64,000 nt of DNA. Source: Chrysemys picta bellii (lineage: Eukaryota). The translations under genes and the position numbers were made by a program. Shown here piece by piece: positions 26,801 through 63,787 of this stretch (within the stretch, counting starts at the first letter, position 1; each line of letters starts with the position of its first letter). The stretch spans positions 84,072,001 to 84,136,000 of the forward strand of contig NC_088800.1 in assembly GCF_011386835.1 (NCBI RefSeq). Reading direction: 5' to 3'. The notes below the pieces were generated by a model, which did not search any database, was not told the origin of the DNA, and saw only the letters and a program-made list of their open reading frames with translations.

Positions 26801-28840
26801 GGTTTTACAATAGACGTTTTAGTGGGCCCAATCTGCCTTCCTTTGTGTTCTCCTTCACCTGTGTGAAGTAGGTGTAAAATCACTGCCATTTTAATGGAGT
26901 AGTGTGTACACCTACTGTTGCACTTTGGTGTGAACAGTAACTCAAGGTAATGGAGAATGAGGCCTGCTATTTAATAGTAAAAGCTATGGAATCATGAAAC
27001 GGAGCAACTTGCTCCCTAGAACTGCTCCATCTAATCCAGGCATCGGCATTTTCACAGCTGTTTACAGAGCTCCTCTAGATTTTCTTTCAAAGGAGACCAC
27101 GCTTAATTCTAAATATTGTAATAAACCGCTCTGGTGCCTTGCAAACTTAAGTACTATACACAGTTTTCAGATTTTAAAAAAGTTGCAGTATTATTTTTAA
27201 CAAACTAAAATTGGAAGGCTGACTTTTTTAAAAAACTGATAATTTTTACTTCTAAAATAATAATAATAATAAAAAAAGGTGATGCAAACACAAGTTCTTC
27301 CAAATTTCTTCCCCTTTCCACTATTTCAAACAGGCATGTGGGAGGGGAAGACTCTTGGATGTTCTGTAGTGGGAGAAAAGCAGCAAAACAGATGCTGCTT
27401 ACTGACCCAAGGCCCCCATGCTGCAGACATGGATGTGAGCAATCCCCTAGTCAATTGCATAGAATTAAATGTACATAAATCTGCACAGGCTTTTAACTGT
27501 GGTTCCTTAATCTGCCTCTGCTGGTACAGGGAGTGCATGTTTTCAAACTAGGAGACTAGGGGAGGTGATCCATCAGGCCTTATGCACAAGCAACTCCCAG
27601 TGAAGTCTTGCTTTGAAGGACCACAAGCCTGGCTCCAATTTAAAGCATTTTGGGGGGTTAATCTGTTCCCATGCTGCGTCCCTAGTAATTGTTTGGCAAA
27701 TCCTATAACATTTTGATTTGGGATTATTCAAAACCAGTTTTTTTTTTAAAATGCTGCTTTTGACTTAAAGATATTCCTAAATATTAAGCAAAAAGACAAT
27801 TCCCCTCCAACCCACTCATTCCAATTACCCTGCGGCTAGTTTCACCTTGCTGTGATTAAGAGTGATACGTTTTTGCCTTATACACTATAATTCTATTACA
27901 TGAAACCTTTCCAACGTGTCAAGGTTGCAGGGGGCCAGTGTCGGCTCCTCGAAAAGATGCACTGCTTTATATACTCTACTGAATATACATGTAGCTGCCA
28001 GATCACACTACAAGGGGCCCATTCACTGCCCGTTTTGATTTTCTGGAGACAATTGTCTTCAGTCGTTAAGGGGAGGTTGGCACAGAAATCCGCACTTTCA
28101 AGTTTCTCAGTTATAGTTTGAGAGAGTCACTGTTGACAAGGACAGCCATGGCTTAGTGCAAAATAAGTGTTTTTTCTAATGCTACATTGGTACACAGAAT
28201 AGTTTCGTTCCATTCAGAGAGCAGCCCCTCCCCCAGTAATTACTAGAAGAATTAAAAATTTTAAGATGTCCCCAAAATATCTTGTTTTGAGGAGCGACAA
28301 AACAGCCTTTTAAGAACAGGAATAGCTCTGGGCCGAACTGTTCCACCTAGAACCCTTACGCTTCCCTTTGCAGCTTTCCCTGTTTTCCAGAAGCCCCCAG
28401 TTTACTTCCAGGTACAAAAACAAACCTGTTTCTTACATCGCCCTTTTCAAGAGGCAGGGCTCAGAGAATCAGCCCATTCTCAGAGGGGTGTAAGAGAGGA
28501 ATTGCTTCGCGTGGTTAACACATACAGCTAGAAGCGAGGGGATCAAAAGGAGTAAAGAAAAACCAAGGCTGAATAACAAGCCCCACTTCCCAGCAGCGAG
28601 GCCCATGCAGTAGGGGAAGCTGCAGTGGCCGAGTCATTTAAAGCCAGACAGGACAAAGCCCTACACATTGTGCTGCGGGGAACGATCCTTGCCCAGCTGG
28701 GAGACAGGCTGGCCTAACAGGCCTCCCCCACGACGACGCTCAGGATACTGCAGTTTGGTAAAAGGCCTGGCCCTCGCCGGGGCCTTGGTTGCGTTTATAT
28801 ATTGGCACAAAATAAACAATCTGACAAACCCGGCTGCATT

Positions 28841-29006
28841 TCACTTCTTCCCCATGAAGGGGCCGAAGAGTCCCCACTCGAACGCCAGCATGGCCTGAGG
28901 GGTCAGCCTCTCTTTGGGCTTCTTGAAGTTATCCTTCTCTGTGCGGAGAGCTCGCAGCACGGCCACCGGAGCCGTCTGGCCAGTGAATTTCTGCACAGCT
29001 TCTTCC
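28841..29006 (-). CDS. HAGHL: HAGHL coding exon 8 (EEAVQKFTG...PFMGKK*)
   Basis: TTGCAG|G acceptor; TGA at 28843-28841. Confidence 0.94.
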
Positions 29007-32000
29007 CTGCAAGTGAAAGCGACACCCATTGTGTGCCCCGTGCGTAGCAGCAAAGGGAAGCGAGAAGACTCAAGGCCAGGTTTGGTTTTCTGGGACACCG
29101 GTGGCCATCTGGAGTCTTGTTTTTAGAGACTCCCTTTGGCTTTACACCAGAGTAACAACAGAATCTGGTTGTAGGCTGTCTCCTCCCACCACTCCTCACC
29201 CTGTGGGGAGCAGGGAGCCAATGGGGAGGGTATCTTCCTCCGTTATATCCCTGTAGAGGGCTGGCTAGGAATGAGTTATTCTGGATGGGGAGCTAGGGGG
29301 AGATGAGACCCCACCCCCACCCCATCACCCACCCGATGCTTCTCGTACTGGCGGGAGGGCAAAATTGCCCTTCCCCTGTGAGTCACCAAGTGAAAGGTCT
29401 GTTGCTGGAAGGCAGGAAAAGCAGTAGCATTCCTAGGCCTGGGGAAAGGGCGCTCCCTTGCTTTGTGTGCTTGGCCCAGTGCGGGACAGGGCAATGCTAC
29501 GGGGCGTCTCCGTTCCCGCGGAGCCCGTTGTCCCCTCAAACTCAACTGGGCCTACGAGCAAGGCCCCTAGTGCCCAGGGGGCTGCGGGAGGCATGGAACT
29601 CTACTCACGAGACCCGCAGGAAGGGGTTGTAGTGGAACTCCTCCTGCAGGGTGGAGGGCACCGTGGGCAAGTCCTCGTCGTCTCGGAGCTGGGGAGAAAC
29701 CACAGACTCGTTCAGCGTATGGAGACCGTCCCCAGCACTGAGCTCACGGAGAATACCAGAGGCAGATGCTTAGAGGCTCCTAGACATTATGGGGACAGGC
29801 ACCTTAAACACACAGACCGATTAGAGGGGCAACAAATCTAGCGTTCGCAGAACTCAATGTTCGTTCCAGCCTCCCCTTCCCACAGGGGCTCTCTGCTTCA
29901 GAAGGGGAAACACCTACTTTTGCCCAAGCGAGTTTCTTTTTCACACTCTCGTTCTCCGGTTCCACTTTCAAAGCAAACTTGAGATTCCTCACGGTGTACT
30001 CGTGCCCACAGAACACTTTCTGCAACGCAAATGAGACAATGCACCTTTACGGCCTGCACATCCCCCGGGCGTGGTACCTCCCCACCCAGGATAGCGACTC
30101 TGGAGCAGCGTCCCAGCGGCAGAGACCCCAGGTGAGCTCCGGGGGACTAGCGTTCCCTCCTGTAGAGGAGCCTGGATGTGGAACTCCCTCAGCGAGAGCC
30201 ACAGACTGCTGGTCTTCAGGGTGCAGCGCAGAGCTCCGCTGCTTGGCCACGCGGCTGCTTGACCTTGGGCGGAGATTCTGGAGGGCTCTTCTCTCTGGTG
30301 GGATGGGTGTCCTACCAGGGGAGGATGCATTTAATGCATGTGGTTTGCCCACTGCAATTAATGCCGGGAGAAGCGGCTGCCTGGGGGAGAGCTCTGGGCC
30401 TGATCCCCATAGTCAGAGTGTCTAGGAATGATTTGGGGGGAGCTCTCCGGCCCGTGTTACGCAGGAGGTCAGACGGGATTATCACCGTGGTCCCTCTGAC
30501 CTTGGAATCTATCACTCATGCTGAGGGGACGGTGGGAAGTAGACGCTGGTGGAGGGTTCTGGGCCCAGTCCTCACACTCATGGAGCTGCTGGGGGCGGGG
30601 GGCAGAAGTAGCTGCCTGAGCGGAGCACACATCTCCCTCAGAGCTCATCCCAGTCTCTTGGGGGAGACCTACCGCCTTGGGTCAGGTCTCCACAGTCACA
30701 GAACAGCTCACCCTTGCAGGGGAGCCTGCGGAGGGGTATGTAGCCCTGGACCAACTGGCTGACAGTGAAAAGGCCAGGTCACCTTGGCCCGGAGAGCTTG
30801 TCCTTTAGGCCTACAAGCCCCAGAAATTGGCCAGAGGTGCCCAAAGCACCGAAGCCACCCAGCTACGATCTCACAACATCAAATCCGCGCTGCGGTCATT
30901 CCAGTCACAGAGTGGCATTTGGCCAACGTGTCAAATTGCAAAAGGCTGGTGGCCAGCCAGAGAAAATCCAGGCAGCGCACGTTGCTCAGGCAGATTGAGA
31001 AGTCCGTTGGCACCAACGCGCTGCGGGCATAAAGCTCTGGCCTGCCTGCTCCGAGACACAGAAAGGGAGATGAAGGGAAATCGGGGAGAGGGCCCATGCA
31101 CGCCCTGAAATAGGCGTGACACTCACAGTGTCCTTCGGCAAAGCACCCAGGATTTCAGTCAGGTTCTTGTACATCTGCTCGGCCGTCCCTTCAAAGAACT
31201 TCCCACAGCCACCAATGAACAAGGTGTCACCTGCGCGGAGAAGCACATCACCTTATTTGGGGGAGGGCAGGGAGGTTCTGCCTGCAGGGCAGGCAGGTGG
31301 CATGTGGCCAGGAGCTGATGCCTGGGGGAAGCCCGCCCTACTGTTGTATCTGTGCCGAGGATGAACAGGACTTTACTCCCCGGGGCTGGCAGTCGGGCAC
31401 TTTTTGCTGGTCTAGCGGGCAGGGCACCTATTCCTACCTCTGCCACAGGCTTCCTCTGTGCTCTTGGGCAAGTCACTTAGGCACATAAATACCTCAGAGG
31501 ATCTGGACCTCTGGGCTACAGTTCCCCATCTGCACAATGCGAATAACAGCTCTGCCCTGCCACCGACCCTGCAGGGTTGGGGGCCAGATAAGGGCCTAGA
31601 CAGATATCACTTTAAAGGAAAACAAATCCCGTCTTGTTCAGGCTTACTCTTAAAATGAGGTAGTCCCATGCAGATCGCGGCGGAATCTAAATGATTCTGG
31701 GTAGAATACTAGTCTAACGATAAGTCCCCCCGTAGCTCATTCAAAGAGATCCCAGAGACTGTGAGACTTTTTAGCTCCTGCTGGCTTCTCAAGAAGGTGC
31801 TGAATACCTGAAAAGAGGGCTGGAGCATCTGGGGAGTTCTCTTCCCACATAAAATAACACATGTGGCCTGATGTATGGCACGGCGTGAACAGGCACCTCA
31901 CGTTAATATCTCCGAACTGCAGAGAAAAAGGGGCAATCCAGGTTGGTAAGACACAGGGGATTTCCATTGTTGGTATTATCACCGCACCTAAGGACCCTAC

Positions 32001-35000
32001 TCAAGGACCGGAACCTCACTGGGCGCTGCATAAACACAGAGCAAAGAGATGGTCCCTGCCCCAGAGAGCTTCCAAACAAAGCAATATGGACTTCCCTTCT
32101 TCACGACATGATGCTACAGCAAATTAGTTTATTTCCATCCCAGCCGGGATCTGCTAGCCGATATTTTTCAGAATCATAGAAGTTTAGGGTTGGAAGGGAC
32201 CTCAGGCGGTCATCTAGTCCAACCCCCTGCTCAAAGCAGGACCAATTCCCAACTAAATCATCCCAGCCAGGGCTTTGTCAAGCTGGGCCTTAAAAACCTC
32301 TAAGGATGGAGATTCCACCACCTCTCTAGGTAACCCATTCCAGTGCTTCACCACCCTCCTAGTGAAATAGTGTTTCCTAATATCCAATCTAGACCTCCCC
32401 CACTGCAACTTGAGACCATTACTCCTTGTTCTGTCATCTGCTACCACTGAGAACAGTCTAGATCCATCCTCTTTGGAACCCCCTTTCATGTAGTTGAAGG
32501 CTGCTATCAAATCCCCCCTCACTCTTCTCTTCTACAGACTAAATAACCCCAGTTCCCTCAGCCTCTCCTCGTAAGTCATGTGCCCCAGACCCCTAATCAT
32601 TTTCATTGCCCTCCGCTGGACTCTCTCCAATTTGTCCACATTCTTTCTGTAGTGGGGGGACCAAAACTGGGCACAATACTCCAGGTGTGGCCTCACCAGT
32701 GCCTAATAGAGGGGAATAATCACCTCCCTCAGTCAGCTGGCAATGCTCCTACTAATACACCCCAATATGCCGTTGGCCTTCTCAGCAACAAGGGCACACT
32801 GCTGACTCTCATGCAGCTTCTCGTCCACTGTAATCCCCAGGTCCTTTTCTGCAGAACTGCCCCTTAGCCAGTCAGTCCTCAGCCTGTAGCAGTGCATGGG
32901 ATTCTTCCGTCCTAAGTGCAGGACTCTGCACTTGTCCTTGTTGAACCTCATCAGATTTCTTTTGGCCCAATCCTCCAGTTTGTCTAGGTCCCTCTGAACC
33001 CTATTGCTACCCCTCCAGCGTATCTACCTCTCCCCCCAGCTTAGTGTCATCTGCGAACTTGCTGAGGGTGCAATTAATCCCCGTCACTCACCCTTACCGC
33101 CGATAAAAGTGGGGGGCCATGACCCCTGCCTCCCCCATGTTCTGGCACCCCTGCCCCTCCCTTACCTCAATAACTAGATGACTCCAGATGGAAATGGGGC
33201 AACCAAAAGATAAGTTCCCAAAGACAGACATGTAAGAATATTTTCCACGTTCCCCAGCTGCTAATGTCAAAGATGATGCAGGACAATAAGTGACAATTAT
33301 GCTTTGTATTTATAAGGCATTTTTCCTCTTCCTGGCATTTCACCAACAGGACAAATATTAGCAAATTAAGATTTACAAGAGGCGGAAATTATCCCTGTGT
33401 TACACATGGGGAAATTTAGATTAGGAATTGGTAGTTTCTGGCTCGCAGGCCTATGCTCACATCCACCCCAGAGTACATAAAGCCAGCTATGAAGTTTGTC
33501 CACAGGATCTATTTGAACAAAGACAGGCTGCAAAATTTCTGGCACTTTGTTGACTGGCAATGTTCAGATATAGGAGTTTGGTTCAATCCATTCTAAAGGA
33601 AAGGGTCATTTGTAAAATTCAGATCCGCATTTGGATTTCAAACAGTCCCAGAGCAAAGCTTTCCAGCAGAGGCTATCACATGTGGATTTATTACCATGGG
33701 GAAATGCTACCATCTACTGGCTAGTTGTTCAAAATGAGAATCTACTGCAGAGAAACCTGGCAGCAATATGCCAGGGAAGGTTTTTAATGCTGGATCCTAG
33801 CGCCGCCCCCCTTGCAGTGATCCCATAGATTCCCATGCACACTAGAGCAAAGACAGACCTAAATGAATTAGTAGTTGGTCTCCGGGAGCAACTGACAAGC
33901 AGCAGCTGTAATTTTTAGCTTCCTCACTGTTCCCCCAGCCACAGCAGTGGGTTACACAGCAGGAAAAAACAAAGACATTAAGAGTGTGCGTAGTGGGAGC
34001 ATGGACCGAATCCTTCCTTGGTTACACCCCTACAATCTCATGCACATTCAACCCAGGGCAAGCAAAGGACTCTCTCTGGTCCCTGTTCTCACATTGACTC
34101 ACTGCAGGTCTCTGGGCACATCACTTCCCAGCTCTGTCCTTCACCATCACCCTCAGTAAAACAGGGATCCCAACACCGACCTCCCTGCCAAGGCGCAGGA
34201 CATGTCATTCAATCACGCGTGTAAAGAGCTTTGAGATCCGGGGGGGCGTTAAGCGAGGCAAGAGCAACAACATTAATAATAAACCTCCAGTCTTGTACCT
34301 TTAACTCCTCGTTGTGAGTCACCTTGTGCGTCAAGGCTCCAATCCGCTCATCCGCCCCATACACCTGCAGCTCTGGATACACCTTCGCCAGTTCTTCGTT
34401 TCCTCGGGCATGGTCCCTTCACAGACAGGGAGTGAGATTAGCGTCTCCGCACATCACTCAGCATTTACTGATACCCCAGAGGAAAGAGAAGGGCTAAAAC
34501 GAGTCTCGGGCTCCTGCCTCAATGTTACCCTAGTACTGCGGGGACAGCCCTGGTGTATGTTGCGACACGAAAAATACCGTGACTCAAGATTTCGGAGCAT
34601 GAAAAAGGGCCACCTGACATTCTGAAAAAGGACACAACTTCTCCATATGTGAGCCCAGCAGCCCAATAGAACTGTTCTGCATTCAGGGCCAGATCCTGGG
34701 GAGTGCTGAGAGCGCTCTGCTTCCACCTCGCAGGATCGGGTCCCTTGATATTGCACAGATCACAGTGTGTGGCTGTCACGTCTTACGAGCAGGGATTTCT
34801 GCATAGATCCTCATGCACTCTGATGAGAATACTAAGAACATAAGAATGGCCACACTGGCTCAGACCAAAGGTCCATCGATCTAGCCCAGTGTCTCATCTC
34901 CCGACATTGGCCAATGCCAGGTGCTTCAGAGGGAATGAACAGAACAGGGCAATTATCAAATGATCCATCCCATCGTCCAGTCCTAGCTTTTGGCAGTTCA

Positions 35001-38000
35001 GAGGTTTAGGGCACCTGGAGCATGGGGTTGCGTCCCCAGCCATCTTGGCTAATAGCCATTGACAGACCTATCCTTCACAACAAGTTCCATAGGTTGGCTG
35101 TGTGTTGTGTGAAGAAGTACTTCACTGTGTGTTTTAAACCAGCTGCCTGTTAATTTCATCCGGTGACCCCTGGTTCTTGTGTTACACAAAGGGGTAAACG
35201 ACACTTCCTTAGTCACTGTCTCCCATCATTCATGATTTTATAGACCTCTATCATATCCCCCCCCCTTAGTCATCTCTTTTCTAAGATGAACAGCCGCAGA
35301 CTTTTTAATCTCTCCTCATATGGAAGCTGTTCCATATCCGTAATCATATTTCTTGCCCTTCTCTGTACCTTTTCCATGTCTAACATACAGTAATGTACCC
35401 CTTTACTCTCCACAGCACTTACCAATGGTGATGGGTGGTAAGAATCGCTTTAAGGGTAACGCCTTCTTTTCTGACAATTTCTAGTAACTAAAATGGGGAG
35501 GAAAAAGTCACGTCAAGGAGCATAGTTTTAAAAAAGATTCCAGCTACTAATCTGTGTCAGGAAATTAATCATTAAAGACCCTAAAGACAATCTTGAAAGC
35601 CTTGTTGCTCTCTGAAACATGACTCTGCAAAGCTAGCCTCTCGCAGGGTCTCCCAGTGACTTCAGATTATGTGTGAACAGATCACATTTCAAGAGGCAGC
35701 CCTGCAAACTCACCCTGCGATCGGAATAATACCTGGTGACGGAAAGGCAGCGTAAAAAACATCTGACACACAAAAAGCCACATGTACAAGAAACAAGGTG
35801 CTGCCTCTTGGGATGGATTTTCATGCAACATAGTATTAAATGTTGTCAAATGCTCTTTAATTTATAAATCAGAACCCAGCGTCAGTAGGGGAGTTAAGTG
35901 ATGGATATTTTTGTTATAAGAAAGAGGTAAGCAGAACAGTAGGTCTCTACCTGGCATTTTGAACGTGAGCAAAGAATACTATATCCAGCTCCTGACTGCC
36001 CCCCTCCTAGGAATAAAAAGCCCTTAGTGCATCATGTATCTTCCCATAAACTCTTTCAAGATGTCTTATAGCAAATGTCACAAACTCAGCCCATTTCTGG
36101 TAGGATCTTTAAGCACGATGCCTTCGGGAGTTCCCTAGAACACAGGGGAATCCACTCGGTGATCCCGGACAGATCAGATCGGGGTAACTCACTATACCAC
36201 TGGAAATCCAACTGCAAATACGCCCCTAATTCGAATCCCCCCTCCCAAATATTCCCAGCATTGATATTGGCAGGGATTCCTAACGATCGGGAGATTGTGA
36301 TATTGGCTTCCACTTATGCAAATTGGGCCATAAAGCGCTATTGAACAAGTGTGTTCCCAAAATGTATGCATGACATTTGCATGTGCAATCACCATGACTG
36401 CTCGTGCAATCACAGCACTTCCAGGCACAAATTATGTGCCTGCCTTTTCACATCTGCAAATATGAAAGTCTGGCCTTTGGTTATTTGCATCATTTCGGTC
36501 TGATTAAGAGGCAAACTGTGATCAAAAAGGATGCAGGGCACAAGAAGGGTGCAAGGGGCAACCCAACTGCAGAAGAGAAAAGACTGCCCGGAGGCAGCGA
36601 TGCTATCAGCATGACCACCCCAAAGGTGACGAGGAGGTGAGGCATAGCCCCACTGTCTCCCACCCCAGCCAGCCAGCTCTGGAGAGGAATGCACCTACAC
36701 CCCTTTCAGGGATATAGCAGCAGCCATACTCCCCCACCCTCCCTGGAGGCATCATGCTTCCAGAGCCGATCAGAAATGGAGACAGATCCTCCTCCCTGCC
36801 CAGTGACTGTATTTGATGGCCAGGTTGGCAGTGGATGAAGTCAGTCAGGTGCAAGCTGTGTTGCTATAAACAGATGCTTTTTTCCATGCTGCTAAGTCCA
36901 GTAGCTCCAACCTGCTGCACCATGATTAGCTGCCAGTCCCAAGGGCAGCTAAAGCAGGGAGAGTTGAGCGCAAGACTAACCCCTAGCAAAAAAAAAACCC
37001 CAGAACTCTTCACTGGTTATAGAAACAGAACCAGGCTGCCACTCCGGTGAAAAGGAACCCTAGCAACCCCTCATGCTGCATGAAGCCTCCTGGAAGCTTG
37101 ATGCTATTAGCAAGAAAACACTTCAGAGTTGGCAAGTGGAATGCAATCGCATGGATCATGAGGGAGATGGACAACTATAGACGCGAAATCCTGGGCATCA
37201 GTGAGAGAGGAGTGATAGGTGTGGATAAGAAGTGCGTAGAGCAAGAGGAGACACTTCTCCTTTGCCTAGGGCACAGCAACATCACCACACAGGGAGCAGC
37301 GCTCAATACAACAGATTCTGTGGGGGGGAAAAATCATTCACCAACTACAGTCTATTAACCAATGCAATGTAGACGCCAAACTCCAAACCAGAGGCCTAAA
37401 GATATCAATCAGTGCTCCGCTCCAACAGAGGAACACAGCGATGACGATAAAGAGAAGTTCTACAATTGCCTCTGATGTGTGATCGACAGAATACCTAAAC
37501 GCGACTTTAATGCTAGAGTAGGATGTGATAACCAAGGTATGGAAAGAGCAACAGGGAAGCTGGGAACCCTTAACCAAAATGGCAAGAGACTCATTGAATT
37601 GTGTTTGGTCACCAACCTGGGTCTTGCAAGTAGCCTGGTCCCTCACAAAGACATAGATGAAGACACGTGGAATTTGTCAGATGGCAAAACGAAAAATCAG
37701 ATCGCCCACAACTGCATTAGCCGAAGATGCAGGTAATCTGTCCAAGACCTAAGGGCATACTGAGCAGCAGATGCTCACAGCAACCACAATCTTTGCATTG
37801 CTAAACCGAAATTAAAACAGAGGAAGATCAACTTTAAACAGAAAGTGGTAAAGAAAATCAACAGTACAAAACTGAAAACAAAGAGTCCCATGAGAAATTC
37901 CAGCGTGAACTAAGGAACAGATTGCAGGCACTGACAGAGGCAGAAAAGGTGATACACAGAAAGGGCCTGAAGAAAAATGGGCAGCACTCAGAGACAATGT

Positions 38001-40642
38001 GATTCGAGCTGTTCCAGTCACAGTCAGATAGCAACACAGACAGAGCAAGAACTGGATAAGCCAAGAGACGTGGTGTCTCAGCAAGGAAAGAAAAATAACC
38101 GAAGGAAAACTCCTGAATTCTAAGACAAACAAACTATTGGAAAACGTAAAGGAGGAGTATAAGAAAGCAGACAAAGCAGTGAAAAGCAGCTGAATGAGAG
38201 CGAAACGGAGATACGTTGAAGACCTAGCAGCAGAAGCTGCTGCTATGATGGGAAACCACAGAGCCCACTTACCAAGTGACTAAAACCCTGTGTGGAAATT
38301 TCAAAACAGGACATGGGCCAATAAAAAGCAAAGACAAAAGAAAGCTTACAACTGAGGTAGAACTGAAAAGCAGATAGACCCAGCTCCACTTCAGCATCCG
38401 ATGTTGATGAAATACATGGACCTGATCAACTTGACTTTAACATCAGTCACTAGAGAAATATCAGAAGTGGAGGCTGCAATCACAAAGCTGAAAAGTAACA
38501 AAGCCGCAAGAGATGATCAAATTCCAGCAGAAATGCTAAACGTAGTTGATACCACCATCCTAACGAAACTGACAGAGCTGTTCAACCAAGTTTGGGGAAA
38601 AAAGACCCCTCCTGGCCAGTGGAAACATGGAATCATTGTCAGAATACCCAAAAAGGGTGATCCTACTGATTGTAGCAACTGGAGAGGAGTTGTAGGGAAA
38701 GCCTTCTGCAGTATGAAACTTTCATCACACAGGATGAAAGAGGCCGTGGATGCAAAGATTAGGGAAGGCCAGGCTGGATTCAGGCCCAAGAGATCCTGTG
38801 TAGATCAGATATTCACACTAAGGACCACCATAGAGGAATATGTAGAATGGCAATCTCCCCTCTTCGTCAATTACATTGATTTTCAAAAGCCTGCACAAGA
38901 CTGTGGAATATTCTTCCATCCTACAGAATCCCAGCTGAAGCTGTCAAGATCATCAAGGAAGCGATTTCCCTTGGTACTTGCAGTATTTATCCCTTTAGTG
39001 TAAAGAACGCAGCACACAATGTGGAGCTGTATCAGAGACCCAGACCCTCCAATGAACTCAGCCTGGGTGGAGCTCTGTACTACTGGGGTTCTGCATTGGA
39101 GCAAGGATCAGCCCACCTGGAGCTCAATGCAGAATGGAGGCTTCTGTTATCAGAGGGTGCATCTGCACGGCTACAAAAGACCTGTGGCACAGCCACCCTG
39201 ACTCAGCTGACTTGGGTTAGCAGGGCTCTGGCTGCGGGGCTAAAAATTGCAATGTAGATGTCCAGACTTGGGCTGGAGCCCGGGCTCGGAGACCCTACGA
39301 GGGGGGAGGGTCCCAGAGCCCAGGCTCCAGCCTGAGCCCAAACGTCTACTCTGCAATTTTTAGTCCCACAGCCCAAGCCAATTGACCCAGGCTCTGACAC
39401 TTGGTGCCCCAGGTTTTTTATTACCATGTTGATAAGAATGGATCCCCAACATTTCCATCTCGTCATTAATGCTGCTTGTTTCCTTTTGTGCCTCAAAAGC
39501 TCACAAATCACAAGTCAGGCCTCAAAAATCATGAGATGATTTTTAAAAATGGATCCTTTTTAAGCCAATTAAAAACAATTAATAATTTAAAAACTAATTT
39601 GGGATTTTTCTCTTTGCCTCCTGGTTTGTGAGACTCTAGGGTCATTTTTTCAAGCTCTTCCCCAAACCATGAAGAGGACTAGAAGCTTTCATTTAAAAAA
39701 CAATTAAGCTGAAATTCTCATATAATGATATGACTCCAGCAGCATCACTCCAAAAACCTAGTCTTGCCAGGCCCATAATAAAAATCACCAGAGTTGGCAA
39801 CACTGCATTTTGGATAATGAAACAGGCCAGTTTCACATTTGTTTCTAGTCAGTTTCATTTTCTGTCCTCTCCACTAGCACAAGACTGTTTTTGTGTTTGG
39901 GTGTCCAGCACTGCAAGGCAAAGTGTGAATCAAGAAAAACAAAACAAAAACATTTTCACTACAATTTAAAAAAAATAATAATAATTTAAGGCACTTCTGT
40001 TTGTTTTAGGTTGTGTAACACCTTTTTTGAGCTTTTCCCCTAAAAACAATATAAATTTTGGGCCTACGCCATAGTCCAATGTCATTTTACAACACACAGT
40101 TGCAGTCCCAGAGTCCATCCTGCAGACCCTCACTGAGTAACTTTTAAACCTGCAAACAAACAGAGAAGCATTTACAAGATTGGGCCTCGTTTGTACAGCA
40201 CCTGGCACAACGGGACCCAATGAGACTGGGAACTTTAGACACTATCGCGATATACACGTTTAATAAATACAATTGTTTCTTGTTTTTCCTGATCATAACT
40301 TTCCACTGAGCTCAGCCCTGATGCAGACATCCCACCTGGACTAACTAACTCCTATAGCTCTTATTTTGTGTGTCACTATGTGCTCCTAGTGGAAGCGAAA
40401 TTAACACAACTCTAACCATTCCCAGAGCTCTAGATTCCTTCCTTTAGTATCTACAAACAAGCCAGCCTGCTCTGAACAACGATCTTGAGCCAGGACCAGA
40501 TGTCCTTTAATTTCAAGGCTTTAAGTAGCAAAATTACCCTCTTGGGAACAGCTGCGTCCACTACAACTGCTTCCTTGGTGTTTTCTTCAATGACCAAGTA
40601 CATGTAGTTATCTTCCAAGACTGAAATCACTTTGACCTTCAT
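28841..40642 (-). CDS. HAGHL: Hydroxyacylglutathione hydrolase-like protein, 282 aa; complement join(40538..40642,35423..35487,34299..34416,31808..31916,31127..31230,29918..30019,29609..29688,28841..29006)
   Basis: 849 nt = 282 aa + stop. Start [27 protein letters not shown] motif, C-terminal extension [10 protein letters not shown] typical of HAGHL. Tail-to-tail with CIAO3 as in human. Confidence 0.95.
29609..29688 (-). CDS. HAGHL: HAGHL coding exon 7 ([14 protein letters not shown]...YNPFLRVS)
   Basis: CCCCAG|CTC and CTC|GTGAGT; 80 nt. Confidence 0.95.
29918..30019 (-). CDS. HAGHL: HAGHL coding exon 6 (KVFCGHEYT...LAWAK)
   Basis: TTGCAG|AAA and AAA|GTAGGT; 102 nt. Confidence 0.95.
31127..31230 (-). 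CDS. HAGHL: HAGHL coding exon 5 ([14 protein letters not shown]...LPKDT)
   Basis: CGCAG|GT and ACT|GTGAGT; 104 nt. Confidence 0.95.
31808..31916 (-). CDS. HAGHL: HAGHL coding exon 4 ([18 protein letters not shown]...ALFSG)
   Basis: CTGCAG|TTC and CAG|GTATTC; 109 nt. Confidence 0.95.
32169..33075 (-). mobile_element. CR1 LINE, 5'-truncated
   Basis: Same CR1 ORF2 peptides on the minus strand (ORFs 32253..32522, 32733..32951); CATAGAAT-type tail at the left end. Confidence 0.95.
34299..34416 (-). CDS. HAGHL: HAGHL coding exon 3 (DHARGNEEL...THNEELK)
   Basis: GTGAAG|G and AAG|GTACAA; 118 nt. Confidence 0.93.
34833..35385 (-). mobile_element. Older CR1-family LINE 3' fragment
   Basis: Begins TAAGAACATAAGAATGGCC..CAGACCAAAGGTCC..CTAGCCCAGT; related to the copy at 4395-4740. 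Confidence 0.7.
35423..35487 (-). CDS. HAGHL: HAGHL coding exon 2 ([22 protein letters not shown])
   Basis: ATTTTAG|TTA and TTG|GTAAGT; 65 nt. Confidence 0.95.
36740..38990 (+). mobile_element. RTE-clade non-LTR retrotransposon (SR3/Perere-3-like), decayed; keeps 5' UTR, AP endonuclease and the N-terminal part of RT
   Basis: Fragments [92 protein letters not shown], with stops and frameshifts. Confidence 0.9.
36897..36970 (+). ncRNA. Degenerate twister-like (type P1) ribozyme relic in an RTE 5' UTR
   Basis: Ordered blocks UAG-CUCC, CCU-[GCUG/UAGC]-UGCC, AGUCCCAAG, UAAAG.AGG.AG.GUUG parallel the twister P1 consensus as recalled. Confidence 0.5.
39150..39420. mobile_element. PIF/Harbinger-like MITE (same family as 3062)
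   Basis: Shares GGGCTC..GAGACCCT, CCCAGGCTCCAGCC, CCCACAGCCCAAG, CAGGCTCTGA blocks. Confidence 0.6.
40538..40642 (-). CDS. HAGHL: HAGHL coding exon 1 (MKVKVISV...AAVPKR)
   Basis: ATG at 40642; donor AGG|GTAATT; upstream acceptors at 40673 and 40660. Confidence 0.95.
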
Positions 40643-41689
40643 AGTCCCAGGGTTGTGAAGCTACACAGGTGAGCTGTAAGGGAAATTACATTATTTTAGA
40701 ACCATCCCATACGATTAAAAAAAAAATCAATCCAGCAGCATCAGAAATATTTAGAACAAGGTCCCGGGCAGAGAGCACCACCATAACAGCTCCAAGTCCC
40801 AACCCTCCTGCGTCTATTTGCACAGACTCCACCTGTGGCAAACAAGCCCAGGGCCGTGACTTACTGGAACAGGTGCAACTCTACTATGAAAAACAGCCTT
40901 TCGCCTCTTGGCCTGCTCTCCTCTCCTCGCCTAGTCAGAAGTAAATCCACAACACTGTGGCAACACAAGCCCAGCCTCAATGCACTAGCTAACAGTTCCC
41001 ATTAAGCGCATCTCATGTTTAATTCACTGGTTTAGCTCCAATTTGGGCTTTCTGGGGATTGTGAACATCCAAACTGCTGCACACAAATGCCTCAGGACTC
41101 AGAAAACTGTTCAGCGTGGAAGGATCAGTCTAGTTTGGTTGAAGGCAGGGGGAGTCAGAGGGAGGCCAGGGGCCAAAGCCGGACTGCCAGATGCTTTTGA
41201 ATGGACCCTGAAATCTTTTTATTTACTTACTATCATTACTTGGGGGGGGGGGGGTAATTATTTTCTCTGGGGTCTGGACCTTGACCAAGAAATTTGGACT
41301 TTGACAAAAACTCATTGGCTACACCTGGTTGAAGGTCTCAGTTTAGAGCTGAGAGTTGCAGCCACTCCTAATACCCCTGTTCCCAGAAGGGGACCCGGGC
41401 GAGCTGGAAATGAGTTCCCAGAATCCAGGGTGGGAGAATTAATTATCACATGGCAGCCCCCAGCCCACGCGCAAAGCATCCCCTCCGTGTGAACCCCCCA
41501 CCCCACACACCCCCAAACCCAGGTGCAAATCGCCCCCCACCAATGTGAAAATCCCCAGGGCCCCCACATGCCGACCACCTCCTCCACCCATGTGCAAATT
41601 AATCAGCTGTCTGCTAGTGTCATCCCCCCTGCCCAGGTGCACCCCCTTTCACACGCGTGTGCAACAATCACCCGGACCCCCCCCCCCGT

Positions 41690-49051: not shown

Positions 49052-62265
<13,214 letters not shown>

Positions 62266-63115: not shown

Positions 63116-63787
63116 ATGGCTTCGTCCAAGTCTTTGGCCAAGTTCTGGGAATGGGGCAGAAACATCATCTGCGTAGGGAGGAATTATGCAGAGCATGCCC
63201 AGGAGCTGAAAAATGCTGTCCCCAGCGAGCCCCTTTTTTTCCTGAAGCCTTCCTCAGCCTATGTCCGGGAAGGAGACCCCATTATCAAGCCTTACTACTG
63301 CAACAATCTGCACCATGAGGTGGAGCTGGGAGTGGTGATTGGGAAGAAAGCCCATGCTGTCTCCCAGAAGTCTGCTATGGACTACGTGGCAGGTTATGCC
63401 CTGTGCTTGGACATGACAGCCAGGGACACCCAAGCTGAGTGCAAGAAAAAGGGCCTTCCTTGGACCTTAGCCAAAGGCTTCAATACGTCGTGTCCGGTGA
63501 GTGATTTTGTGCCCAAGGAAAAGATTCCAGACCCACACAAGCTGCAGATCTGGCTCAAGGTAAATGGTGAGCTGAGGCAAGAAGGGGAAACCTCTTCTAT
63601 GATTTTCTCTATCCCCTACATCATCAGCTATATCAGTGAAATCATCACCCTGGAAGAAGGGGATCTGATTTTGACAGGTAGCCCCAAAGGTGTTTCTGCT
63701 GTCCAGGAGCACGATGAGATACAAGCTGGAATACACGGCATCCTCAGTATGCAGTTTAAGGTGGCACAGCAATCGCGCCAATCTTGA
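63116..63787 (+). CDS. FAHD1: Fumarylacetoacetate hydrolase domain-containing protein 1 (oxaloacetate decarboxylase/tautomerase, acylpyruvase), 223 aa, uninterrupted ORF
   Basis: FWEWGRNIICVGRNYAEH, FLKP, HHEVELG, LDMTARD, PWTLAK, GDLILTG motifs; head-to-head with HAGH as in human. Confidence 0.97.
   Translation: MASSKSLAKFWEWGRNIICVGRNYAEHAQELKNAVPSEPLFFLKPSSAYVREGDPIIKPYYCNNLHHEVELGVVIGKKAHAVSQKSAMDYVAGYALCLDMTARDTQAECKKKGLPWTLAKGFNTSCPVSDFVPKEKIPDPHKLQIWLKVNGELRQEGETSSMIFSIPYIISYISEIITLEEGDLILTGSPKGVSAVQEHDEIQAGIHGILSMQFKVAQQSRQS

What the first reader, a model, noticed from the sequence alone, without database searches (positions are those of the whole stretch)
28841..40642. HAGHL keeps a complete glyoxalase II active site: likely a second active enzyme in this lineage
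Seen: HAGHL matches the neighbouring HAGH at all metal-ligand motifs (THHHWDH, PCHTSGH, GDTLF, CGHEYT) and at the glutathione-binding positions (GCGKFFEG identical; Tyr of GHEY; R..K in LRTEKDNF vs IRKEKDNF). Established: the equivalent human HAGH residues are H54/H56/D58/H59/H110/D134/H173 and K143/Y145/Y175/R249/K252. Recalled: human HAGHL has degenerated at several of these (GCGSCLEG, GHEHT, LCKERARF) and has no known function. Inference: the reptile gene shows the ancestral state, a leaderless S-D-lactoylglutathione hydrolase. This could matter for methylglyoxal handling in highly glycolytic, anoxia-tolerant turtles, if this is such a species.
Basis: partly seen in the sequence, partly recalled or inferred. 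Interest (0 to 1): 0.7.

Follow-up and report, generated by a model that had tools for sequence, protein, structure and literature searches.

The report
Turtle HAGHL keeps ancestral glyoxalase-II site
This is the turtle copy of HAGHL, an old, annotated, expressed duplicate of the glyoxalase II gene; it keeps every metal-binding and glutathione-contact residue, so it probably still works on glutathione thioesters, but this is an inherited ancestral state rather than a turtle or reptile novelty.

Summary
An 8-exon, 282-aa minus-strand gene (28841-40642) has canonical splice sites. It carries the seven glyoxalase II metal ligands and K143/F145/Y175/R249/K252, aligned without gaps to human HAGH (1QH3). 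HAGH lies in tandem upstream, at 49055-55805.

All eight exon translations occur exactly in the RefSeq HAGHL protein of Terrapene/Chrysemys, so the gene is already annotated. Spliced contigs from four studies show five of the seven exon junctions, and loose ends fit a sixth. dN/dS against a sea turtle is 0.15, against 0.02 for HAGH.

- The placental HAGHL proteins sampled have replaced positions 143, 175, 249 and 252.
- The intact set is ancestral. It is shared with gar, two catfishes and a parrot, and with all 12 turtle species read at these positions.
- It is not reptile-wide. Most birds have C175 and most squamates C249.
- Across HAGHL the metal ligands never change, while the glutathione contacts are among the fastest-changing sites. 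In HAGH they do not change.
- Turtle HAGHL is the slowest-evolving tetrapod copy, so slow evolution explains much of the retention.
- The link to anoxia tolerance has no support.

Enzyme activity is likely but untested. The scan had already noted this same stretch (s1-318444).

The parts
40538..40642 (-). HAGHL coding exon 1 (M1-R35). The ATG is at 40640-40642 and a GT donor follows 40538.
   Evidence: identical in P0314
40661..40663 (-). In-frame TAG seven codons upstream of the ATG. It rules out an N-terminal (mitochondrial) leader in this species.
35423..35487 (-). HAGHL exon 2 (L36 to the first two bases of W57). It holds H54 (35431-35433) and H56 (35425-35427).
   Evidence: the loose end at 34417 in four runs reads on into this exon
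34299..34416 (-). HAGHL exon 3 (last base of W57 to K96). It holds D58 (34413-34415), H59 (34410-34412) and the HAGHL-specific R61.
31808..31916 (-). HAGHL exon 4 (F97 to the first base of G133). It holds H110 (31875-31877).
   Evidence: joint 31916>34299 in four runs
31127..31230 (-). HAGHL exon 5 (G133-T167). It holds D134 (31226-31228), K143 (31199-31201) and F145 (31193-31195).
   Evidence: joints 30019>31127 and 31228>31806 (cut +2)
29918..30019 (-). HAGHL exon 6 (K168-K201). It holds H173 (30002-30004) and Y175 (29996-29998).
29609..29688 (-). HAGHL exon 7 (L202 to the first two bases of S228).
   Evidence: joints 29688>29918 and 29005>29608 (cut +1)
28841..29006 (-). HAGHL exon 8 (last base of S228 to K282, plus TGA). 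It holds R249 (28943-28945), K252 (28934-28936) and the HAGHL-only C-terminal tail (about residues 260-282).
49055..55805 (-). Tandem paralogue HAGH. The eight homologous coding exons are at 55701-55805, 55093-55155, 53683-53787, 52488-52592, 51596-51697, 50987-51088, 50033-50101 and 49055-49150. The reading frame stays open upstream of MKVELL, which fits a leader.
63116..63787 (+). FAHD1-like single-exon ORF (223 aa), upstream of HAGH on the opposite strand (divergent). It serves as a synteny marker.

Best explanation
What it is: an intact, transcribed and selectively constrained turtle orthologue of vertebrate HAGHL. HAGHL is the ancient tandem duplicate of HAGH (glyoxalase II), and the duplication predates the split of ray-finned and lobe-finned fishes.

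How it most likely works (inferred): it is a leaderless cytosolic di-metal thiolesterase. H54/H56/H110 and D58/H59/H173, with bridging D134, would hold two metal ions, and a metal-bound hydroxide would attack a thioester carbonyl. Y175, R249, K252 and the residue-143 backbone would hold a glutathione moiety. The protein should therefore hydrolyse S-(2-hydroxyacyl)glutathiones such as S-D-lactoylglutathione, at least in vitro.

How to read the intact contact set: it is the ancestral state. It is kept in all 12 turtle species read at these positions and also in gar, two catfishes and a parrot. It is helped by the very slow evolution of turtle HAGHL. It is not a reptile-wide trait or an anoxia adaptation.

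Why it is not simply a redundant HAGH: the protein also carries every HAGHL-specific feature, namely 13 clade-fixed substitutions (including G61R next to the metal motif) and a conserved C-terminal amphipathic tail.

Shown here: gene structure, expression and splicing, orthology, residue content, fold, purifying selection and the family-wide substitution pattern. Inferred: catalysis, substrate and cellular location.
For: - Exon model with canonical splice sites.
- All eight exon translations occur exactly in the RefSeq protein P0314.
- Spliced contigs in 4 runs from 4 studies and 2 organisms show the junctions e8-e7, e7-e6, e6-e5, e5-e4 and e4-e3, and loose ends at 34417 read on into exon 2.
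- Gapless alignment over residues 1-259 to human HAGH 1QH3, with all 7 ligands and K143/Y175/R249/K252.
- AF2 model of P0050 (one residue different): pLDDT 88.8. Its best PDB match is 1qh3_A, with TM 0.95 and 59% identity.
- TIGR03413 score 269.6 bits, against 271.3 for turtle HAGH; the cut-off is 200.8.
- dN/dS 0.147 against Caretta (13 non-synonymous and 23 synonymous changes).
- HAGH and HAGHL clades each have 100% support, and each spans fish to mammals.
- All 12 turtle species read carry HHDHHDH plus KFYRK.
- About 4 changes are expected at the five sites over the turtle subtree and none is seen; rough P is 0.017.
- R249 and K252 set thiol specificity in Leishmania GLO2 (review PMC9686547).
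Against: - No enzyme assay exists for any HAGHL (PMC4819959; literature searches).
- Across HAGHL the glutathione-contact positions are among the most variable sites (143: 21 changes; 145: 12; 175: 12; 252: 11; 249: 8; mean 4.8). The metal ligands never change. The function that HAGHL conserves across vertebrates may therefore not need canonical glutathione binding.
- Turtle HAGHL carries all 13 HAGHL-fixed differences and the conserved tail.
- For the three side-chain contacts alone, retention by chance is not excluded (P about 0.14).
- Selection is about seven times more relaxed than on HAGH.
Confidence: 0.6

Rival explanations
1. HAGHL, including the turtle protein, has its own non-glyoxalase substrate, such as another thioester or ester. 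That function would be defined by the invariant metal centre together with the HAGHL-specific residues and the C-terminal helix. On this view the intact glutathione contacts in turtles are leftover ancestral residues, preserved only because turtles evolve slowly.
For: - The contacts at 143/145/175/249/252 sit between the 74th and 98th percentile of variability in HAGHL. They do not change in HAGH, apart from one F/Y change at 145, and the metal ligands are invariant.
- 13 clade-fixed substitutions and a tail are conserved from Polypterus to primates, including lineages that lost the contacts.
- Turtles have the shortest root-to-tip path among tetrapods, 0.21 against 0.33-0.74.
- There is precedent for GLO2-like proteins that are not GLO2: Arabidopsis GLX2-1, as cited in PMC9686547.
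Against: - Arg249 is kept in all 18 fishes sampled, and Tyr175 in 15 of them, so glutathione-type binding was probably kept for a long time after the duplication.
- Zero changes in 11 turtle tips against about 4 expected.
- The TIGR03413 score equals that of true HAGH.
- Residue 143 is reported to contact glutathione through its backbone (PMC3846777). Active E. coli GloB has Arg at the aligned position. Much of the variability at 143 may therefore be harmless.
Confidence: 0.33
2. The HAGH-like residues in turtle HAGHL were copied in recently from the adjacent HAGH gene by gene conversion. The two genes are tandem and share identical exon phases.
For: The two genes lie 8.4 kb apart on the same strand with the same eight-exon layout. 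Read-through HAGH-HAGHL chimeric models exist in birds.
Against: - Synonymous differences between the two window genes are saturated in the exons that carry the contacts: pS is 0.85 in exon 5, 0.85 in exon 6 and 0.76 in exon 8.
- Turtle HAGHL groups with other HAGHL with full support and keeps all HAGHL-specific residues.
Confidence: 0.02
3. The gene is a decaying or silent duplicate, and its intact motifs are without consequence.
For: Its dN/dS is about seven times higher than that of HAGH. RefSeq lists several truncated isoform models for turtles.
Against: - The open frame is intact in 12 turtle species.
- dN/dS of 0.147 is far below 1: 13 non-synonymous changes against roughly 80 expected under neutrality.
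- Spliced contigs stand at word depth 27-205, against 2-8 in most of the introns, in four studies.
Confidence: 0.02

Closest known systems
Human/vertebrate HAGH (glyoxalase II, EC 3.1.2.6; PDB 1QH3/1QH5)
   Same: - 59% identity and a gapless alignment over residues 1-259.
- The same seven metal ligands, and the same K143/Y175/R249/K252.
- The same fold (TM 0.95).
- The same eight-exon structure as the HAGH gene next door.
   Different: - It belongs to a separate clade that has existed since before bony fishes diverged.
- It has no mitochondrial leader.
- It has 13 clade-fixed substitutions, including G61R, Y170F, G207D and H235F.
- It has an extra conserved C-terminal tail of about 22 residues.
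- Its dN/dS is about seven times higher.
Placental-mammal HAGHL (orphan MBL-fold protein with no assigned function; PMC4819959)
   Same: It is the orthologue. It shares the clade, the C-terminal tail, the 13 HAGHL-specific residues and the invariant metal ligands.
   Different: - Placentals replaced K143 (mostly S, L or W), Y175 (H), R249 (C or Y) and K252 (mostly R).
- They sit on a long stem branch of 0.38 substitutions per site.
- The turtle protein keeps all of these residues and has the shortest tetrapod branch.
GLO2 homologues with altered substrate contacts (Leishmania GLO2; Arabidopsis GLX2-1)
   Same: They show that the MBL-fold metal centre can be kept while residues 143/249/252 set or abolish glutathione-thioester specificity (PMC9686547). 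The HAGHL family as a whole shows the same pattern.
   Different: The turtle protein has not changed these contacts, so it resembles canonical GLO2 here rather than these divergent forms.

Membership tests
Glyoxalase II / hydroxyacylglutathione hydrolase (TIGR03413; Pfam Lactamase_B + HAGH_C) | THxHxDH motif and the full set of seven metal ligands (H54, H56, D58, H59, H110, D134, H173) | tested here: met
Glyoxalase II / hydroxyacylglutathione hydrolase (TIGR03413; Pfam Lactamase_B + HAGH_C) | Glutathione contacts K143, Y175, R249, K252 (position 145 is Y or F) | tested here: met
   K, F, Y, R, K, identical to all non-mammalian HAGH sampled. The roles of these residues are taken from PMC3846777 and PMC9686547.
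Glyoxalase II / hydroxyacylglutathione hydrolase (TIGR03413; Pfam Lactamase_B + HAGH_C) | Score above the curated equivalog cut-off | tested here: met
   P0050 (one residue different from the window protein) scores 269.6 bits against a cut-off of 200.8. Turtle HAGH scores 271.3. Single exons map collinearly on the model.
Glyoxalase II / hydroxyacylglutathione hydrolase (TIGR03413; Pfam Lactamase_B + HAGH_C) | MBL alpha-beta/beta-alpha fold plus a helical C-terminal domain | tested here: met
   AF2 model with pLDDT 88.8. Best PDB match is 1qh3_A, TM 0.95 and rmsd 2.0.
Glyoxalase II / hydroxyacylglutathione hydrolase (TIGR03413; Pfam Lactamase_B + HAGH_C) | Hydrolysis of S-D-lactoylglutathione to glutathione and D-lactate | not testable with these tools
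   No assay of any HAGHL was found in the literature.
Vertebrate HAGHL subfamily | Falls in the HAGHL clade and not the HAGH clade | tested here: met
   Both clades have 100% SH-aLRT support, and turtles sit inside sauropsid HAGHL.
Vertebrate HAGHL subfamily | C-terminal extension with the conserved A-M-L-A-[LF]-E-W-G-L-[LF] tail, and the clade-fixed residues (R61, F170, D207, F235 and others) | tested here: met
Vertebrate HAGHL subfamily | No mitochondrial presequence | tested here: met
   In-frame TAG seven codons upstream of the ATG.
Vertebrate HAGHL subfamily | Gene neighbourhood next to CIAO3 | tested here: met
The Emys locus L004 has HAGH, then HAGHL, then a convergent 476-aa Fe-hydrogenase-like gene.
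HAGH proper (orthologue of human GLO2) | Orthology to HAGH, with a mitochondrial leader and a C-terminus near residue 260 | tested here: not met
   The true HAGH is the neighbouring gene at 49055-55805.

The most novel reading that the evidence does not exclude
HAGHL began as a second, cytosol-only glyoxalase II and still is one in slowly evolving lineages such as turtles, gar and many fishes. Placental mammals underwent a burst of change (stem branch 0.38 substitutions per site) that replaced the side chains at all four main glutathione-contact positions (143, 175, 249, 252) but kept the metal centre and the C-terminal helix. That would mean a switch to a new substrate. Turtle or gar HAGHL would then be the natural 'ancestral-like' reagent for finding the function of the orphan human enzyme.
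Probability: 0.4. Interest if true: 0.5.

Novelty: new member of a known kind. Interest (0 to 1): 0.35.

Why it matters
HAGHL is one of the few human metallo-beta-lactamase-fold proteins with no assigned reaction. Reviews of glyoxalase 2 ignore it, and cancer papers simply assume that it hydrolyses lactoylglutathione.

The comparison made here gives that question a concrete shape. The metal centre is invariant across vertebrates. The glutathione contacts are kept in turtles, gar and many fishes but were replaced in placentals, most birds and most squamates.

Testing turtle or gar HAGHL side by side with a placental HAGHL would show whether the family is a second glyoxalase II that changed its substrate in mammals. 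For turtle biology the result is modest: the gene is ordinary and already annotated, and nothing ties it to anoxia tolerance.

Tried and rejected
- Per-exon Pfam scan: only exons 6-8 gave hits to HAGH_C. NCBIfam per exon was more useful.
- The representative-library search with exon 8 returned mostly fragments and mispredicted models. It served only to obtain ids for later searches.
- The single-sequence AF2 model was poor (pLDDT 42.9) and was discarded in favour of the model built on alignment A1.
- Gene conversion from HAGH is rejected: pS is 0.73-0.85 in all exons except the 21-codon exon 2 (0.47) and exon 4. The exon 4 row of that call is mis-registered by one codon and was ignored.
- A pseudogene or silent copy is rejected.
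- P0046, P0055 and P0056 were first taken for HAGHL. They proved to be HAGH-HAGHL chimeric models and were left out of the tree and the counts.
- Partial or alternative-isoform rows were also left out of the tree: P0130, P0132, P0133, P0129, P0134, P0074, P0065, P0153, P0164, P0193, P0053, P0038, P0181, P0179, P0192, P0141, P0116, P0254, P0270, P0281, P0283, P0290, P0309 and P0274.
- The Limphong 2009 GLX2-1 paper (PMC2677751) is not held.
- The paper search for HAGHL + paralog + glyoxalase found nothing.
- The unnamed Logan protein P0180, which may be of human origin, was left out.
- Human HAGHL was not returned by name and was not looked for.
- Root-to-tip values inside the HAGH clade depend on an arbitrary root and are not used.
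Full report
OBSERVATION

A six-frame motif scan and inspection of the minus strand give eight coding exons:
- exon 1: 40538-40642
- exon 2: 35423-35487
- exon 3: 34299-34416
- exon 4: 31808-31916
- exon 5: 31127-31230
- exon 6: 29918-30019
- exon 7: 29609-29688
- exon 8: 28841-29006

Every intron has GT and AG ends. The exons sum to 849 nt, which is 282 codons plus TGA. The THHHWDH motif is split between exons 2 and 3 and is restored by splicing. [26 protein letters not shown] and LRTEKDNF are all present.

A second gene with the same eight-exon layout lies upstream on the same strand at 49055-55805. It carries the HAGH versions of the motifs (IRKEKDNF).

Exon-wise searches of the PDB sequences align exon 5 to residues 134-167 of human HAGH (1QH3) and exon 8 to residues 229-259. 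The stored full-length protein P0314 aligns to 1QH3 without a gap over 1-259. The human numbering therefore applies directly: H54, H56, D58, H59, H110, D134, H173, K143, F145, Y175, R249, K252.

It is also F in the neighbouring HAGH and in every non-mammalian HAGH sampled. Y145 was seen only in mammals, most of them.

An in-frame TAG lies seven codons upstream of the ATG, at 40661-40663, so no leader can be read through. In HAGH the frame stays open upstream of MKVELL, which fits a leader.

HANDLING OF THE SPLICED MODEL

Exons were searched by reference. For full-length work I used stored database proteins:
- P0050 (Emys orbicularis HAGHL), which differs from the window model at one residue (T46A).
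- P0314 (RefSeq HAGHL isoform X1 of Terrapene carolina triunguis and Chrysemys picta bellii), which contains all eight window exon translations exactly.

The window is therefore from an emydid turtle, and the gene model is already annotated. Human HAGHL was not returned by name and was not sought. Monkey orthologues stand in for it.

IS IT REAL AND USED?

Contigs of four runs, from four studies and two organisms, skip exactly the predicted introns. The joints are 29005>29608 (cut +1), 29688>29918, 30019>31127, 31228>31806 (cut +2) and 31916>34299, all with CT..AC ends on the + strand. The loose ends at 34417 read on into the end of exon 2. Word depth is 27-205 on exons against 2-8 in most of the introns. 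The kind of run is a guess ('RNA?'), but spliced forms at that depth are hard to explain otherwise. The exon 1-2 junction lay outside the stretch laid and was not tested.

Against Caretta caretta (loci L001 and L002, counted exon by exon and summed), HAGHL has dN/dS 0.147 (13 non-synonymous and 23 synonymous changes). HAGH has 0.021. HAGHL is therefore under clear purifying selection, though about seven times more relaxed than HAGH.

WHAT IT IS

- A tree of 59 HAGHL and 44 HAGH proteins splits them into two fully supported clades. Each clade contains ray-finned fishes, amphibians, sauropsids and mammals. The duplication is thus older than bony vertebrates, and the window gene is the HAGHL orthologue.
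- It carries all 13 residues that are fixed differently in the two clades: E4K, L6I, H43E, G61R, V97F, K103R, K121E, E151Q, Y170F, G207D, H235F, A236T and I248L.
- It has the HAGHL-only C-terminal tail, whose core A-M-L-A-[LF]-E-W-G-L-[LF] is conserved from Polypterus to primates.
- In Emys the gene order is HAGH, HAGHL, then a convergent 476-aa gene with Fe-hydrogenase domains, which is CIAO3. In the window a FAHD1-like ORF lies beyond HAGH at 63116-63787.
- An AF2 model of P0050 built on alignment A1 (pLDDT 88.8) matches human glyoxalase II best, with TM 0.95 and 59% identity. No HAGHL structure is in the PDB.
- Against the GloB equivalog model TIGR03413, turtle HAGHL scores 269.6 bits and turtle HAGH 271.3. 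A marmot HAGHL scores 227.1 and a Cebus isoform 201.2. The cut-off is 200.8.

THE FAMILY-WIDE PATTERN

Apart from alternative C-terminal isoform models and one partial row, all HAGH sampled have K143, Y175, R249 and K252.

Across HAGHL the seven metal ligands are invariant in all rows used for the tree. The contacts at positions 143/145/175/249/252 differ by lineage:

| Lineage | 143 | 145 | 175 | 249 | 252 |
|---|---|---|---|---|---|
| Turtles | K | F | Y | R | K |
| Gar, two catfishes, a parrot | K | F | Y | R | K |
| Most other fishes | R, K or Q | F or L | Y | R | K, R, M or Q |
| Frogs | variable | F or Y | Y, H or N | R | K or R |
| Most birds | K, Q or R | F, L or C | C | mostly R | K or R |
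| Squamates | K or R | mostly L | Y | mostly C | mostly K |
| Marsupials | R | L | H or Y | H | N |
| Placentals | mostly S, L or W | L | H | C or Y | mostly R |

Parsimony counts on the tree give 0 changes at each metal ligand. They give 21, 12, 12, 8 and 11 changes at positions 143, 145, 175, 249 and 252, against a mean of 4.8 per site. Among the 123 sites that never change in HAGH, position 143 is the most variable in HAGHL, and 175, 252 and 249 are in the top twelve.

Two caveats apply to position 143. Its contact with glutathione is reported to be through the backbone (PMC3846777). Active E. coli GloB has Arg at the aligned position. The weight therefore falls on 175, 249 and 252. Residues 249 and 252 are known specificity determinants in trypanosomatid GLO2 (PMC9686547).

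WHY TURTLES KEEP THE SET

- All 12 turtle species that could be read, from softshells to sea turtles and tortoises, have the full set.
- Turtle HAGHL has the shortest root-to-tip path of any tetrapod group: 0.21 substitutions per site, against 0.33-0.45 for birds, squamates, frogs and marsupials, and 0.74 for placentals.
- I took relative site rates from non-turtle HAGHL and the length of the subtree from the HAGHL root to all turtle tips (0.32). On that basis about 4.0 changes are expected at the five sites and none is seen, giving a rough P of 0.017. For positions 175, 249 and 252 alone the expectation is 2.0 and P is about 0.14.
- Some extra constraint in turtles is therefore suggested but not shown. 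Slow evolution explains much of the retention.
- Gene conversion from the adjacent HAGH is excluded. Synonymous differences between the two window genes are saturated in the exons that carry the contacts (pS 0.76-0.85).

MECHANISM

The most likely reading is that turtle HAGHL is a cytosolic di-metal thiolesterase that can still bind a glutathione moiety and hydrolyse S-(2-hydroxyacyl)glutathiones. I put this at about 0.6.

The main rival, at about 0.33, is that HAGHL as a family has another substrate. That substrate would be defined by the invariant metal site, R61 and the other clade-fixed residues, and the conserved tail. On this view the turtle's glutathione contacts are a slowly decaying inheritance.

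Nothing supports a link to anoxia tolerance, because species that are not anoxia-tolerant share the residues.

LITERATURE

- HAGHL is listed as a glyoxalase II subfamily member of unassigned function (PMC4819959).
- A large glyoxalase 2 review does not mention it and states that vertebrates use a single gene (PMC9686547).
- A review of S-D-lactoylglutathione only names it (PMC9138017).
- A 2026 cancer paper assigns it the HAGH reaction without evidence (PMC13062333).
- No paper on HAGHL evolution or enzymology was found.

VERDICT

The gene is an ordinary, already annotated orthologue. The 'ancestral state' inference is right, but the state is neither reptile-wide nor turtle-specific. Activity is plausible and untested.

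The modest interest lies in the family-wide contrast between an invariant metal centre and labile glutathione contacts, together with a burst of change on the placental stem. Turtle or gar HAGHL would be useful reagents for finding the function of the orphan human enzyme.

The scan had noted this same stretch before (s1-318444).

Noticed in passing
P0046, P0055, P0056 (bird database proteins); in the window, HAGH 49055-55805 and HAGHL 28841-40642 on the same strand: Three bird gene models (Ficedula, Dromaius, Passer) are HAGH-HAGHL chimeras. HAGH exons 1-3, 1-4 or 1-5 are joined in frame to the remaining HAGHL exons. This is possible because the tandem paralogues share exon phases. It suggests read-through transcription and also contaminates HAGHL annotation.
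   Followed up: partly
window 32070-33070 (HAGHL intron between exons 3 and 4): CR1-like LINE fragment. The minus-strand ORFs carry typical reverse-transcriptase C-terminal and tail motifs. Summed contig depth in the four runs runs into the tens of thousands, so it is an abundant and apparently transcribed repeat family.
   Followed up: no
window about 36900-39000 (+), inside HAGHL intron 1: RTE-type retrotransposon with a 200-aa reverse-transcriptase ORF at 38401-39003.
   Followed up: no
window 40643-40700 (-) against L001 3290-3533: Sea-turtle gene builds (P0048, P0051; 332-338 aa) add a 50-56-residue Ala/Arg/Gly-rich N-terminal extension, read from an upstream exon into the frame of MKVKV. 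In the window a small sequence difference just upstream of the ATG puts a TAG in that frame, so the extension cannot exist here. Whether it is real in sea turtles is open.
   Followed up: partly
tree (placental HAGHL proteins P0137-P0191): The placental HAGHL stem branch is 0.38 substitutions per site, several times longer than any other internal branch in either clade. It coincides with replacement of the residues at positions 143, 175, 249 and 252.
   Followed up: partly
window below 28470 (HAGHL 3' side): The spliced contigs run on for about 2.3-2.5 kb beyond position 28470 (X1 record 1 and X5 record 13). This suggests a long 3' UTR reaching towards the convergent CIAO3 gene.
   Followed up: no
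HAGH proteins: Position 145 of HAGH is Phe in all fishes, amphibians and sauropsids sampled, and Tyr in most mammals sampled. The Tyr145 named in human structural work is therefore a mammalian state.
   Followed up: yes
P0130-P0133, P0326-P0333 (turtle HAGHL isoform models): RefSeq lists shorter turtle isoforms of 228-255 aa. Some of them lack the last exon, and with it R249, K252 and the tail. Their reality and abundance were not checked.
   Followed up: no
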